Source: Thecamonas trahens ATCC 50062
Taxonomy: Eukaryota > Protista > Apusomonadida
DNA: 64,000 bases
Assembly (NCBI RefSeq): GCF_000142905.1
Contig: NW_013657671.1
Coordinates: forward strand, 480,373 to 544,372
Direction of reading: 5' to 3'
Numbering within the stretch: the first letter of the stretch is position 1; each line of letters starts with the position of its first letter. The translations under genes and the position numbers were made by a program. This document shows, piece by piece, positions 35,972-40,016 of the stretch. Under the pieces are notes generated by a model. It saw only the letters and a program-made list of their open reading frames with translations. It did not search any database and was not told the DNA's origin.

Positions 35972-38900
35972 TCACGGGCATCGAATGACAATGACAGAGA
36001 TGTTGTCCGTCGAGCCCGAGTTGTACGCCATGTCGCGGAGGACTGCGGCTGCCCGTGAGAGCGAGCCAGTCTCGCGGAAGACTTGCGTCACAACATGCGC
36101 CGCCGTCGCGTCGTCGATCTCGTCCCACACGCCGTCGCACGCCATGATGAGCACATCGCCCGAGCTAAAGGCCACCGGCGCTGCACAGTACGGTGCTGCA
36201 ATGACATACGGCTTGAGGTGAAAGTCGCCAAATGCCCGCGATACCGCAAGGTTACCGTTCACCCGCCCGTTGAAGGCCACATACGCCCGCGCCCGGCGAA
36301 TCCGCTCCTCCTCCTCAGCCGTCGTGGGCTTGTGGTCCATCGACAGCCGGCGCACCCGCCGCCGCACCCGATTGAGGGCAGACGATGAGTCCGACCGCCG
36401 CATCGACGCAATCGACCGCGAAAGCGGCTTGCTGCTCTCGGCCGCCCCGGCCGCCATCTCATCAAACGAGGTTGCGGGGACAAGGACTGCCCGCGAGTCG
36501 CCGACGTTGGCTACCGTGAGCTGGCCGCCGACAAAAAACGCAAACAGGCCCGTTGTCCCACCGCGCGAGTCTGACTTGGGCGTTGCGTCCGAGGTAAGAA
36601 ACGCACACAGCTCCTCCTCGGTCTTTTCGATGGCCGCCACCAGCGCGCTGCAGAGCGCAGCATGACTTGCCTCGCTGTCGTCGCTGGAGAGCTCCGGCAG
36701 CTCAAGATTGGTGTGGAGTCGCTCGGCGCAAAATGCTGACGCCGCCGTCCCGGCGTGACCGTCAAAGAGTCCAAAGTAGTCGACTTGGAGCGCGTCGACT
36801 CGCGGATGCGGGAGCGCCCAATGCCACGTCAAGGCGTCCTCCATTGTCGGCCGCTTGCCGATCATCTCTGCCACGCCGAGCTCGAACCGAGCACGCTCGG
36901 AGCCAGTCACGTACGCCTTGCCGGCCATCAGTGCGTCGTACGGCGAGTCGTACTCGCTGCCCACCGCGGTCCAATCAGCAAAGGCCTCTGACACGCTCCC
37001 GGGATTACCCTCGGTACAGCACCAGAGCGCAGACGCGAGCGCCGGTGGCACCTCGCTCAGTTGGTTGTACGAAATGTCTGCCCGCGTCACCCTCCCGCTC
37101 AGCGCAGCCTCCATGTCTTCGAGCGAGATGCCGTCGCTGGTCATGGCGTTGCGCCCCAGGTACACGGCCGAGATCCGTGGGAGCTCGAGGAGGAACAAAG
37201 GGAACGCCGAGATGGCGTTCCCTGTTGCTACAAGCTCCTCAAGCTCAGAGAACTGGGAGAGGTCTGGCAGCTCGGTCAACTGGTTGTTGCCGACGCTGAG
37301 GACGACGAGGCCCGAGGCCAGCATGCTGATTTCATCCGGCAGGCGCGCTATGCGATTGCCAAACACGTTGAGCTCAGCGAGGTAGCAGAGCCCGCCGACC
37401 GAGGACGGGAGCGCGACGAGGTCGTTCGACCCGACGTCGAGTGTCTCAAGGCAGGTCAGCTGACCGAGCGTCTCCGGGAGCATGGTGAGTGCGTTGTGCG
37501 AGACGATGATCGAGTCGAGGTGGGTGGCGAGCGGCACCAGTGACGGCAAGCTGGTGAGCGCGTTGTGACGGCAGTTGAGGTACGACAGCGTCGCCGTCGC
37601 CGACGCCGCGGCAACACCGAGCTTGGGCTCGGGCCATTGTGCAATCGAGTTGTGGCTCGCGTCGAGCCACTGCAGCGCCGGCAGCGTCCAGAGCCATGCC
37701 GGCAGCGCGTCGAGCGTGTTGTGCGAGACGTCGAGCCGTGAGAGATTCGGCAGCTCCAACGGGTGCGACGAGAGGTTGACCAGCTTGTTACCGGCCAGGT
37801 TGAGCTCGGTCAGCTTGGGCAGTGCGTCGAGCGCATGTCCGAGCGTCTCTAGCTTGTTCTTGGAGAGGTCGAGCACAACAAGCGAGCCCCAGCTAGTGTG
37901 GATCCCGTCGGGGAGGAGGTGAAGGCTATTGCGCCGGAGAATGAGCTTGACAAGCGCAGTGTAAGAGGCGAGCTGCGGCGGGGCGGTCGTAAGCGAGTTG
38001 AAGCCAATGTCGAGCTCGGTGAGCGCCGGTAGGTGAGTAAGGTCTGTCGGCCACTCGTCAAGCTCATTGCCGCCAACCTTGAGCTTGGCCAGGTTGGTGA
38101 GCGCGGTGAGGGCGTGCGGCAGCTGGGTGATGGAGTTATGGGTAAGGTCGAGCTCTGCGAGCGCGGTGAGACCTGCAAGCTCTTCTGGAACCGAGGTGAG
38201 AAAGTTCTTGGCAAGGATGAGTCGCTTCCAGTGGGTGTTGTCAAAGACTTCGAGAGGAACAGTGTCGAGGTTGTTGTCGGCAAAGTAGCCAAACGGCATG
38301 GTCTTCTTCGACGGCGGCTTGGGCAGGGCCTTGGGTGGCGGCGTGGCAGGCGAGGCGGATGAAAGAGGACAGTAAAAGTCGTCACCGCCGAGGAGAGAGA
38401 TGGCTTCTTCAAAGCTGGCCACCGTTGCCGGGAGGAGGGTAAAGAGAGTGTCCGGCGAAACGTGCGGCGCAGCTGGCACGCCGTCGCCGGTCACCACCGC
38501 CGCCAGCTCGGCCACCATTGGCGCGGCAGCAGCGAGGATAGCCGGGTCGCCGCCGCCCTCGACAAGCCTGTTGGCTGCTGCGGCGGCGTCGGTGGCAAGC
38601 TTAATGCGAGCGTCAAAGTACGCGCGCTCAGCAGCAAGCTGTGCAGCTTCGTGGGCGGTTTCGTTGCCAAGCGAGTGCTGGCGGAGGCTCGCGAGCCTGA
38701 CGCGAAGCGCGTCGACAAGTTTGTCTTCCAGCGCACACCATGCTGCGGCATGGCTATCAGCCCGTCCCTCGAGCGTCGTCTTGGCGGCGTCGAGCTTGTA
38801 CAGCAGCTCGCGCGAGCTGGCAATCCAGGTCTGGAGCTCGTGGGTGGCGCTGGTGAGTTTGTCGGCGAGCAACGAAGCGGTCTCGCCCAGCGGGAGGCAG

Positions 38901-40016
38901 TGATGTGAGGAATGGGCGCCGTGCATGGCGCAATTGTGGCAGGCGGTCGCCTCGCACGCAGAGCAGTACAGGGTCTGCGGCAGATCGTGGATCTCGCACG
39001 CTCTGCTTCGCTGGGCAATTGCCGACGCCAGCGCAAACCTGGTGCCTTCGTCCGACTCGCTGCTAAGCCGCGGGCTCGCAGGCGGCGGCGTCTCGTCGCC
39101 ATCGGCAGGAGGAGGGGCCGGGGACTCGACATGGGCCTCGTCCTCGGAGCCGCCGTCGGCCGAGTCGGACGCCGACTCGGCTTGCGCAAGCGAGACAAGC
39201 TCGATCCTGGTGTGGGAGGCGAGCGGGGAGCCATCCGCATGGTGGCTCGTCCAGCACTCGCCGCAAAACGAGAGCAGGCCAATTTGAGCGCAGACCAGGC
39301 ACTGGGCCTCTGCAGGTGCATTCCCTGCAGCAGCGCACCTGTCGCAAGCCAGCGGCTCGCCGCTGCGCACCTGACCAAGCTTTGCCGCCAGCTCCTCATC
39401 CAGATCATCATTTCCAGGCAAAGCATCAACTCCGCAACCCTTGATCGACGACGGTGTCCCGCAAGCCAAGCACGTCACCGCATCGACCTCGCACCTGTAG
39501 CAGCAGACAGAGCCAGTCCCAAGGCGAGCAGCGCGTATTCATCGACATGAGCGAGTGGTATGGATTTGAAGAGAGGGCAAGAAGGGGATCCGAGTGGCCG
39601 AACAAAGCGCAGCAGCATCAATCCAGTTCCAGTGAGTCCAGGAGGGGGGAGGGGGAGGGGGAGGAGATAGAGGCAGGGAGATGAGAGGGTGGTAGTGGTG
39701 GTAGTGGTGGTAGTGGTATGGGTGGTGGTGGTGGTGGTATGGGTGGTGGTATGGGTGGTATGGGTGGTGGTGGTATGGGTGGTGGTCGGTGATTGGCAGG
39801 GAAAAGGGGAGGCGTGCGGCATTCTGGAACGTACGCAAGGTCATGGTGATGGTGGTCGGCATTGTGGTCAAAGCAGAGGTGGGAGTATGTTCGGCGGGTA
39901 CGTTCAAGTAGGACAAGGGTAGGGATGCATGTGGCGCAGACAGCATGCCAGCATTCAAGCATCCGTGGCTTGTGCAGTACCTCTAGGCACACACTGCAAA
40001 GTACTTGATTGGCCAT
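35972..40016 (-). CDS. RING - B-box1 - B-box2 - coiled coil - LRR - PP2C protein; exons 40016..39835 and 39494..35972
   Basis: Spliced C3HC4 RING (CSVC..CWH..CATC...CLAC), two B-boxes, helical region, roughly 18-20 LRRs, and PP2C motifs RPTMED, FDGHAG, NVGDSR, CDGVWD, STDNIS. Confidence 0.85.
39495..39834 (-). other. GT-AG intron (340 nt, phase 2)
   Basis: GTACGT donor and CTACAG acceptor with matching phase; contains CCA-type repeats; removal completes the RING. Confidence 0.75.

What the first reader, a model, noticed from the sequence alone, without database searches (positions are those of the whole stretch)
35972..40016. TRIM-type E3 ligase module (RING-B1-B2-CC) fused to a PHLPP-like LRR-PP2C phosphatase
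Seen: the ORF track misses the RING. Removing intron 39495..39834 gives C3HC4 (CSVC-x11-CWH-x2-CATC...CLAC) followed by the TRIM-like GVDALPGN linker. Then come B-box1 (CDRC..CLVC..FCGECWTSHH..H), B-box2 (CEIH..LYCSAC..CHNC..HSSH), a coiled coil, an LRR solenoid and a PP2C domain with its metal-binding Asp residues intact. Known: classical TRIM C-terminal domains are SPRY, COS-FN3, PHD-BROMO, NHL, MATH, ARF or TM, while LRR-PP2C occurs in PHLPP and fungal adenylyl cyclase. Inference: one polypeptide may couple substrate recognition, dephosphorylation and ubiquitination. I do not recognise this architecture from any described family.
Basis: partly seen in the sequence, partly recalled or inferred. 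Interest (0 to 1): 0.8.

Follow-up and report, generated by a model that had tools for sequence, protein, structure and literature searches.

The report
TRIM-like ligase fused to LRR-PP2C phosphatase
A single gene of the protist Thecamonas trahens joins a TRIM-type ubiquitin-ligase module (RING, B-boxes, coiled coil) to a leucine-rich-repeat PP2C phosphatase with an intact active site; I found the same fusion only in two uncultured relatives and in no paper, so it is a real but narrowly distributed new domain combination.

Summary
The window is Thecamonas trahens ATCC 50062.

Both exons and both B-boxes find human TRIM proteins as their best solved-structure matches. The C-terminal half has about 17 SHOC2-like LRRs and a PP2C domain that keeps every invariant catalytic residue.

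Two uncharacterised orthologs carry the same architecture. One comes from environmental assemblies and has an intron at the same place and phase. The other is a single open reading frame that runs straight through the RING, including its unusual 30-38-residue insert. So the join is real and the fusion is conserved.

The PP2C domains of the three form one clade. Its sister is a second Thecamonas LRR-PP2C, and both lie inside the ancient LRR-PP2C family from which PHLPP and Cyr1 arose. There is no PH, RA or cyclase domain, so this is not PHLPP proper.

Thecamonas also encodes RBCC-MATH, RBCC-NHL and TBC-RUN-RBCC proteins.

Coupled dephosphorylation and ubiquitination is plausible but untested. 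The RING lacks the N-terminal helix that many TRIMs use to dimerise. This is a new variant of known kinds, of moderate interest.

The parts
39835..40016 (-). Exon 1: start codon and the first six RING ligands (C7, C10, C22, H24, C27, C30), plus most of the RING insert loop with its conserved (S/T)Y..(L/V)C motif
   Evidence: zf-C3HC4_2 27.6 bits; best PDB sequence hits TRIM31 4.8e-5, TRIM39, TRIM5, TRIM34. The exon is conserved in L035/L036 and in P0030.
39495..39834 (-). Intron, 340 nt, GTACGT...CTACAG, phase 2
   Evidence: The public model P0001 uses it. Orthologs L035 (541-620) and L036 (198-277) have an 80-nt intron at the same position and phase, GTACGT...GTACAG. The neighbouring gene's intron also ends GTACAG.
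39461..39472 (-). Last RING zinc-ligand pair, C69-x2-C72, at the start of exon 2
   Evidence: This pair is conserved in all three orthologs.
39212..39346 (-). B-box1-like zinc finger (residues 111-155)
   Evidence: The Cys/His pattern is conserved with L035. Statistics are weak: Pfam ANCHR-like_BBOX 17.4 bits and MID1 B-box1 E 0.39. AF2 pLDDT is 61-78 in the short model. The finger is absent from P0030.
38888..38998 (-). B-box2 (residues 227-263), with canonical TRIM spacing
   Evidence: Pfam zf-B_box 27.4 bits. All eight ligands are invariant in the three orthologs. PDB sequence hits are TRIM72 8.8e-4, TRIM2, TRIM28, TRIM54 and TRIM63. Foldseek rmsd is 0.7-2.0 A to TRIM B-box2 structures.
38381..38887 (-). 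Coiled-coil / helical hairpin region (residues 264-432)
   Evidence: AF2 helices at model residues 202-273, 280-312 and 317-335. Foldseek hits are TRIM72, KAP1/TRIM28 RBCC and TRIM5alpha B-box-CC. Conserved positions are shared by the three orthologs.
37007..38281 (-). LRR solenoid, about 17 repeats of 23 residues (residues 466-890), opened by the conserved PFGYF motif
   Evidence: Pfam LRR_8 3.6e-41. SHOC2 E 2.6e-54. Repeat register. pLDDT above 90. Foldseek SHOC2 TM 0.69.
35975..36904 (-). PP2C (PPM) phosphatase domain (residues 925-1234) with all catalytic motifs, plus a roughly 45-residue low-complexity insert (about 1066-1110, between the GDSR and DHKP motifs)
   Evidence: Pfam PP2C 8.6e-50. 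Alignment to ABI1. The invariant columns of the 73-sequence alignment are all kept. Foldseek ABI1 TM 0.85.

Best explanation
This is one real, conserved two-exon gene (AMSG_11709 of Thecamonas trahens). Its protein is a TRIM-class RBCC module (RING, B-box1-like finger, canonical B-box2, coiled coil) whose variable C-terminal 'cargo' is an ancestral-type, catalytically competent LRR-PP2C phosphatase.

Shown here: the gene structure, the domain order, the intact PP2C metal and phosphate-binding residues, conservation of the whole arrangement in two other organisms, and descent of the PP2C from the LRR-PP2C family.

Inferred: the coiled coil makes an antiparallel dimer as in TRIMs. The SHOC2-like LRR together with the PP2C forms the substrate-binding cradle. 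The enzyme removes Ser/Thr phosphates from a signalling protein bound there. The RING recruits an E2 to ubiquitinate the same substrate or the enzyme itself. Signal termination by dephosphorylation and by ubiquitin marking would then be coupled in one polypeptide.
For: Gene model: the join equals public protein P0001. An intron sits at the same site and phase in L035 and L036. P0030 has an uninterrupted ORF from RING to PP2C, with the same long RING insert.

TRIM nature of the N-terminus: the exon-1 RING is closest to TRIM31/39/5/34. B-box2 and the helix after it are closest to TRIM72, TRIM2, TRIM28, TRIM54 and TRIM63. Foldseek finds TRIM72, KAP1 and TRIM5alpha B-box-CC. All ten language-model neighbours are RING/B-box clusters (a lead only).

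Phosphatase: PP2C E 8.6e-50, and all invariant residues of 73 LRR-PP2C homologs are retained. The model has pLDDT above 90 across LRR-PP2C. An amoebozoan LRR-PP2C with the same residues was shown to be active in vitro (PMC12002173).

Family: the PP2C domains of the three RBCC proteins form one clade (SH-aLRT 99). Its sister is the Thecamonas paralog P0031 (95), inside the LRR-PP2C group.

Context: the genome has other RBCC proteins with MATH, NHL, TBC-RUN and other partners.
Against: No activity, expression or oligomeric state was tested.

The RING has a 30-38-residue insert between ligand pairs 3 and 4, so Pfam models align only its first three quarters.

The first RING Cys is preceded by only 2-12 residues. 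The N-terminal helix needed for four-helix-bundle RING dimerisation in many TRIMs (PMC7752041) is therefore missing.

The residue after the last Cys is G, M or T, not the basic 'linchpin' common in active RINGs (my own knowledge).

B-box1 is weak and is missing from P0030.

The RBCC model has low confidence outside the B-boxes (pLDDT 51), and no dimer was modelled.
Confidence: 0.55

Rival explanations
1. The protein is an oligomeric phosphatase only. The RBCC serves as a dimerisation or higher-order assembly and localisation scaffold for an active LRR-PP2C. The RING is catalytically silent or needs a partner, as proposed for class VI TRIMs.
For: The RING insert is atypical. There is no N-terminal flanking helix and no basic residue after the last Cys. 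PMC7752041 reports TRIM24/28/33 RINGs as monomeric, with no detectable E3 activity for TRIM28.
Against: All eight zinc ligands and the RING insert motif are conserved across three orthologs that are only 27-39% identical in the RBCC. This argues for selection on the RING. The exon-1 sequence is very close to active TRIM RINGs.
Confidence: 0.3
2. The ligase acts mainly on itself. Auto-ubiquitination sets the level of the phosphatase, or the PP2C removes regulatory phosphates from its own RBCC in cis. TRIM21's B-box autoinhibition is relieved by phosphorylation.
For: PMC5906095 (abstract) describes phosphorylation control of a TRIM B-box. Covalent linkage of the two activities makes cis regulation easy.
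Against: There is no direct evidence, and no phospho-sites were mapped.
Confidence: 0.1
3. The model is an annotation artefact that fuses separate genes (a RING or B-box gene and an LRR-PP2C gene), or attaches a spurious RING exon.
For: Only the first 61 codons depend on a predicted splice. No transcript data were available here.
Against: B1, B2, CC, LRR and PP2C lie in one 1168-codon ORF with no stop. The same order is found in P0029/L035/L036 and P0030. P0030 is uninterrupted through the RING, and L035/L036 share the intron's position and phase.
Confidence: 0.03
4. The PP2C is a pseudophosphatase, as in metazoan PHLPP, and the protein is a pure scaffold or E3.
For: The LRR-PP2C chassis lost activity repeatedly in evolution (PMC12002173).
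Against: All catalytic residues that are invariant in 73 homologs are present: R942, D947, D972, G973, H974, D1060, D1181, G1182, D1224, N1225.
Confidence: 0.02

Closest known systems
TRIM / RBCC E3 ligases (for example TRIM72, TRIM31, TRIM39, TRIM5alpha, TRIM28)
   Same: The order is the same: N-terminal C3HC4 RING, B-box(es), then coiled coil. B-box2 has the canonical spacing. The best sequence and fold matches of each piece are TRIMs.
   Different: The C-terminal cargo is LRR-PP2C, which is not among the classes listed in the TRIM classifications I read (Marin 2012, PMC3503706). The RING carries a 30-38-residue insert and lacks the N-terminal dimerisation helix. The organism is not an animal.
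Ancestral LRR-PP2C phosphatases (Stenamoeba SsLRR-PP2C, Entamoeba, Balamuthia; Husremovic et al. 2025, PMC12002173)
   Same: LRR sits directly before PP2C. The M1/M2 metal ligands are intact. The PP2C groups with these proteins in the tree.
   Different: Those proteins have no RBCC. Their N-terminal extensions, where present, are unrelated.
PHLPP1/2 and fungal adenylate cyclase Cyr1
   Same: They are derived from the same LRR-PP2C chassis.
   Different: The protein has no RA, PH, kinase or cyclase domain. Metazoan PHLPP and Cyr1 have lost catalytic residues, whereas this protein keeps them.
SHOC2-MRAS-PP1C holophosphatase
   Same: The LRR is most similar to SHOC2 in sequence (E 2.6e-54) and in fold. 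Both use an LRR scaffold that presents a phosphatase.
   Different: Here the phosphatase is a covalently fused PP2C, not a recruited PP1. No GTPase partner is known.
Dictyostelid PP2C-DUF2921-RING-H2 proteins (P0044 Dictyostelium citrinum, P0060)
   Same: They are another natural fusion of a PP2C with a RING ligase domain.
   Different: The order is reversed: PP2C is N-terminal and a RING-H2 follows a transmembrane DUF2921. There is no B-box or coiled coil, and the PP2C lies in a different clade.
Other Thecamonas RBCC proteins (RBCC-MATH/TRIM37-like, RBCC-NHL, TBC-RUN-RBCC)
   Same: They lie in the same genome and have the same RBCC module type. The exon-1 RING is 38-45% identical over 29 residues to their RINGs.
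   Different: Similarity in the B-box and coiled-coil region is only weak. None is a recent duplicate, and none carries LRR-PP2C.

Membership tests
TRIM / RBCC family | N-terminal C3HC4 RING finger | tested here: met
   Eight ligands in RING order, conserved in three orthologs. Pfam thresholds are reached by exon 1 alone. The nearest PDB sequences are TRIM RINGs. Caveat: there is a 30-38-residue insert before the last Cys pair.
TRIM / RBCC family | B-box2 zinc finger (C-x2-H-x7-C-x7-C-x2-C-x5-H-x2-H) after the RING | tested here: met
   The spacing is exact. Pfam zf-B_box scores 27.4 bits against a cut-off of 24.1 in the exon-2 ORF, and 31 bits in P0029. The rmsd to TRIM B-box2 structures is 0.7-2.0 A.
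TRIM / RBCC family | B-box1 (optional in TRIMs) | tested here: inconclusive
   The pattern is present and conserved with L035. Scores are below threshold, and the finger is absent from P0030.
TRIM / RBCC family | Coiled coil directly after B-box2 that forms an antiparallel dimer | tested here: inconclusive
   Long helices are predicted directly after B-box2, and Foldseek hits TRIM B-box-CC structures. Confidence is moderate to low, and no dimer was modelled.
TRIM / RBCC family | E3 ubiquitin-ligase activity of the RING | not testable with these tools
   This needs a biochemical assay. The lack of an N-terminal flanking helix is a caution.
LRR-PP2C family (PHLPP/Cyr1 superfamily sensu Husremovic 2025) | LRR solenoid fused directly N-terminal to a PP2C domain | tested here: met
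   Pfam results. The model has pLDDT above 90. The fold matches SHOC2 plus ABI1.
LRR-PP2C family (PHLPP/Cyr1 superfamily sensu Husremovic 2025) | PP2C domain groups phylogenetically with other LRR-PP2C proteins | tested here: met
   Quick ML tree of 59 PP2C domains. The clade RBCC trio + P0031 (95) lies inside the LRR-PP2C group with amoebozoan members. Deep nodes are weakly supported. PHLPP proper was not in the tree.
PHLPP proper | RA and PH domains N-terminal to the LRR | tested here: not met
   There is no RA or PH hit at E <= 1. The N-terminus is an RBCC.
Fungal Cyr1 adenylate cyclase | Class III cyclase domain C-terminal to the PP2C | tested here: not met
   The protein ends nine residues after the last PP2C motif (D1224-N1225).

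The most novel reading that the evidence does not exclude
This would be a genuinely bifunctional TRIM: an E3 ligase whose substrate-recognition domain is itself an active Ser/Thr phosphatase, so that one dimeric enzyme erases a phosphate and writes ubiquitin on the same bound target. Together with the RBCC-NHL, RBCC-MATH, TBC-RUN-RBCC and other RBCC genes of the same genome, it would show that the TRIM module was already being recombined with diverse cargo domains before opisthokonts. It would also show that the LRR-PP2C chassis gained different N-terminal regulators independently in apusomonads (RBCC) and opisthokonts (RA/PH).
Probability: 0.35. Interest if true: 0.7.

Novelty: new variant of a known kind. 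Interest (0 to 1): 0.5.

Why it matters
TRIM ligases are usually presented as an animal family. Marin 2012 found only the TRIM37-like subfamily outside animals. The LRR-PP2C family has just been re-evaluated, with metazoan PHLPP reported to be a pseudophosphatase derived from an active ancestor.

Thecamonas belongs to the sister group of opisthokonts. A conserved fusion of the two modules there gives a natural test case in three respects. It shows how the RBCC scaffold accepts an enzymatic cargo. It links phosphatase and ubiquitin signalling physically. And it shows what the pre-opisthokont LRR-PP2C looked like.

It is not a new fold or a new chemistry. Domain shuffling of this kind is common in protists, so the value is evolutionary and mechanistic rather than categorical.

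Tried and rejected
(1) I considered alternative splice sites that would shorten the RING loop, such as a donor after CTT near 39910 with an acceptor at 39488. I rejected them because the long loop, with its (S/T)Y..(L/V)C motif, is present in all three orthologs and is uninterrupted in P0030.

(2) Word searches with the full protein and with residues 1-470 found only the protein itself. The orthologs appeared only with the PP2C region.

(3) The exhaustive profile search was meant to use only B-box2, coiled coil and linker. The tool modelled all 1166 positions of P0030 instead, so LRR proteins filled the list. It still shows nothing between P0029 (756 bits) and generic LRR giants (432 bits or less). 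A regex scan of all 280 fetched proteins found B-box2 together with PP2C only in P0001, P0029 and P0030. The RBCC-specific exhaustive search therefore remains undone.

(4) A JGI metagenome contig scan with the RBCC alignment found nothing.

(5) An own-genome search with the RBCC region found only LRR matches and no RBCC paralog. BLAST against the ten other B-box ORFs gave only weak hits.

(6) The RBCC-only AlphaFold model was poor (pLDDT 51), so its global fold matches are unreliable. Only the B-box superpositions are trustworthy.

(7) The supplement of PMC12002173 does not mention Thecamonas, RING or B-box.

(8) I did not build the spliced protein myself. Joined-sequence steps used only the database protein id P0001. 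Both structure predictions, the PDB sequence searches and the alignment queries (A1-A3, hence the exhaustive profile search) used exon 1 and exon 2 separately by reference. The complete RING was therefore never folded.
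Full report
IDENTITY AND GENE MODEL

The window is contig C9 (480373-544372) of the Thecamonas trahens ATCC 50062 assembly. On the minus strand there is a 1168-codon ORF at 35972..39478. Upstream of it is a 132-codon ORF at 39618..40016 that starts MANQVLCSVC.

The sequence between them has a GTACGT donor at 39834 and a CTACAG acceptor ending at 39495. 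That makes a 340-nt, phase-2 intron. Joining 39835 to 39494 keeps the frame.

The public protein AMSG_11709 (P0001, 1234 aa, named only 'uncharacterized' or 'PPM-type phosphatase domain-containing') has exactly this sequence. Wherever a joined sequence was needed I used the database id P0001. Otherwise the two exons were searched apart by reference. The complete RING was therefore not included in either structure prediction.

INDEPENDENT SUPPORT FOR THE JOIN

A word search restricted to the PP2C region found two proteins with the same architecture.

P0029 represents a cluster of five environmental ENA sequences. It is 69% identical in the PP2C and 53% identical overall.
- Its contigs L035 and L036 carry a RING exon upstream of the called gene.
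- That exon is separated by an 80-nt intron (GTACGT...GTACAG) at the homologous position and in the same phase 2.
- L036 has an ATG twelve codons before the first RING Cys.

P0030 comes from a Logan assembly of SRR30952584. It is 45% identical in the PP2C and is one uninterrupted 1166-codon ORF running RING-B-box2-CC-LRR-PP2C.

In all three, the RING has an unusually long loop between the third and fourth ligand pairs: 38, 30 and 35 residues. The loop contains a shared (S/T)Y..(L/V)C motif. The loop spans the Thecamonas exon junction, so its conservation supports that junction.

The neighbouring gene's intron also ends GTACAG, so the splice signals fit the genome.

N-TERMINAL HALF

- RING. Exon 1 alone passes the Pfam RING thresholds (zf-C3HC4_2 27.6 bits, zf-C3HC4 26.3 bits). 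Its nearest solved-structure sequences are TRIM31 (4.8e-5), TRIM39, TRIM5, TRIM34, TRIM30, TRIM2, TRIM56, TRIM21 and TRIM25.
- B-box2. Residues 227-258 have the exact canonical spacing. They pass Pfam's cut-off in the exon-2 ORF (27.4 bits; 31 bits in P0029). All ligands are invariant among the orthologs.
- RBCC part of exon 2. It finds TRIM72 (8.8e-4), TRIM2, TRIM28, TRIM54 and TRIM63 in the PDB, and only weakly MID1 B-box1 for residues 111-155.
- Structure. An AlphaFold model of this part is poor overall (pLDDT 51). It does give B-box folds at 60-80 and long helices directly after B-box2. Foldseek returns TRIM72, KAP1/TRIM28 RBCC, TRIM5alpha B-box-CC and isolated TRIM B-box2 domains at 0.7-2.0 A.
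- Language-model neighbours are all RING/B-box clusters (a lead only).
- B-box1 is therefore plausible but weak, and P0030 lacks it.

C-TERMINAL HALF

About 17 LRRs of 23 residues span residues 483-885. They resemble SHOC2 in sequence (E 2.6e-54) and in fold (TM 0.69).

The PP2C domain scores E 8.6e-50. It aligns motif by motif with ABI1.

In a 73-sequence alignment of LRR-PP2C proteins the invariant columns are the catalytic ones, and the Thecamonas protein keeps all of them: R942, D947, D972, G973, H974, D1060, D1181, G1182, D1224 and N1225.

The model of the exon-2 protein has pLDDT above 90 through LRR and PP2C (mean 77, pTM 0.70).

FAMILY PLACEMENT

Husremovic et al. 2025 (PMC12002173) describe LRR-PP2C as an ancient eukaryotic family.
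- The ancestral form was an active phosphatase, shown with an amoebozoan enzyme.
- It gained an RA domain in the opisthokont ancestor.
- It then gave rise to PHLPP (with a PH domain; a pseudophosphatase in animals) and to Cyr1 (with a cyclase).
- Thecamonas, RING and B-box are not mentioned in the text or in the held supplement.

In a quick maximum-likelihood tree of 59 PP2C domains, the three RBCC proteins form one clade (SH-aLRT 99). Its sister is a second Thecamonas LRR-PP2C, P0031 (95). Both lie inside the group of LRR-PP2C proteins that includes Balamuthia and Entamoeba.

The protein has no RA, PH or cyclase domain. It is thus a member of the LRR-PP2C family, but not PHLPP proper.

HOW RESTRICTED IS THE FUSION?

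- The full-length and RBCC word searches gave only the protein itself.
- The exhaustive HMMER search, through a profile that unintentionally covered the whole of P0030, found P0029 at 756 bits and then only generic LRR proteins at 432 bits or less.
- Of the 280 proteins fetched, a B-box2 pattern together with PP2C occurs only in the three orthologs.
- Other long LRR-PP2C proteins have unrelated N-termini.
- A JGI metagenome scan found nothing.
- Dictyostelids have a different PP2C-RING combination: PP2C-DUF2921-RING-H2.

An RBCC-only exhaustive search was not achieved, so very divergent members could have been missed.

GENOMIC CONTEXT OF THE MODULE

Thecamonas has at least ten further B-box ORFs:
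- RING-B-box-CC-MATH (TRIM37-like);
- RING-B1-B2-CC-NHL;
- two RING-B-box-CC paralogs with an unassigned C-terminus;
- TBC-RUN-RING-B-box-CC;
- B-box-CC-RasGAP;
- B-box-DUF2009;
- an APC10-like / B-box / RING protein.

First-stage notes of this scan list several of them. Marin 2012 (PMC3503706) reported only the TRIM37-like subfamily outside animals and called the others animal-specific. None of these genes is a close paralog of the RBCC studied here.

MECHANISM

Shown: the architecture, its conservation, and an intact phosphatase site.

Inferred from TRIM and SHOC2/PHLPP knowledge:
- the coiled coil forms a dimer;
- the LRR-PP2C forms a cradle that binds a phosphoprotein and dephosphorylates it;
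- the RING recruits an E2 to ubiquitinate the substrate or the enzyme itself.

Cautions:
- The RING insert is atypical.
- Only 2-12 residues precede the first Cys, so the N-terminal helix of the four-helix-bundle RING dimer is missing. That helix is described as imprinted in many TRIMs, and some monomeric TRIM RINGs show no detectable activity (PMC7752041).
- No basic residue follows the last Cys.

A scaffold-only role for the RBCC is therefore a serious rival.

VERDICT

The functional coupling is untested. This is a new combination of two known modules, conserved in a small clade and already present in public databases as an uncharacterised protein.

Noticed in passing
L025-L034 (G000 contigs C59, C29, C1, C14, C22, C18, C23, C28, C50, C31): Thecamonas has a varied B-box/RBCC repertoire: RBCC-MATH (TRIM37-like), RBCC-NHL, two RBCC paralogs with an unassigned C-terminus, TBC-RUN-RBCC, B-box-CC-RasGAP, B-box-DUF2009 and an APC10-like / B-box / RING protein. 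Marin 2012 reported only the TRIM37-like subfamily outside animals.
   Followed up: partly
P0031 (Thecamonas paralog, 1286 aa): A second Thecamonas LRR-PP2C has weak RA_2 (17.6 bits) and FERM_M (22 bits) hits at its N-terminus. If these are real, a ubiquitin-like RA/FERM module on the LRR-PP2C chassis may predate opisthokonts. That would differ from the scenario in PMC12002173.
   Followed up: no
P0044, P0060 (dictyostelids): A separate natural fusion of a PP2C with a ligase domain: PP2C, then the transmembrane DUF2921, then a C-terminal RING-H2.
   Followed up: partly
window 39495-39834 (-): The 340-nt intron is almost AG-free and holds a CCA/CCACCA-rich tract. The tract reads as a Pro/His-rich ORF and makes the exon-1 ORF appear to run on to 39618.
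   Followed up: no
L035:340-400 versus L036:1-60: Two environmental alleles of the ortholog differ at the start. L036 has an ATG twelve codons before the RING. L035 has CTG there and no in-frame ATG upstream of the RING.
   Followed up: no
window 39835-39880 (-), P0001 residues 50-59: A His-rich run (HNADHHHHD) lies inside the RING insert. It is specific to Thecamonas and is absent from both orthologs. An acidic/Pro-rich spacer of about 65 residues between B-box1 and B-box2 (residues 158-222) is also largely lineage-specific: L035/L036 lack it and P0030 has only a shorter, unrelated spacer.
   Followed up: no
P0006 (EukProt tig00021680_g23034.t1, 1407 aa): An LRR protein with two C-terminal RING fingers and no PP2C. 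It is another LRR-RING combination from a different eukaryote.
   Followed up: no
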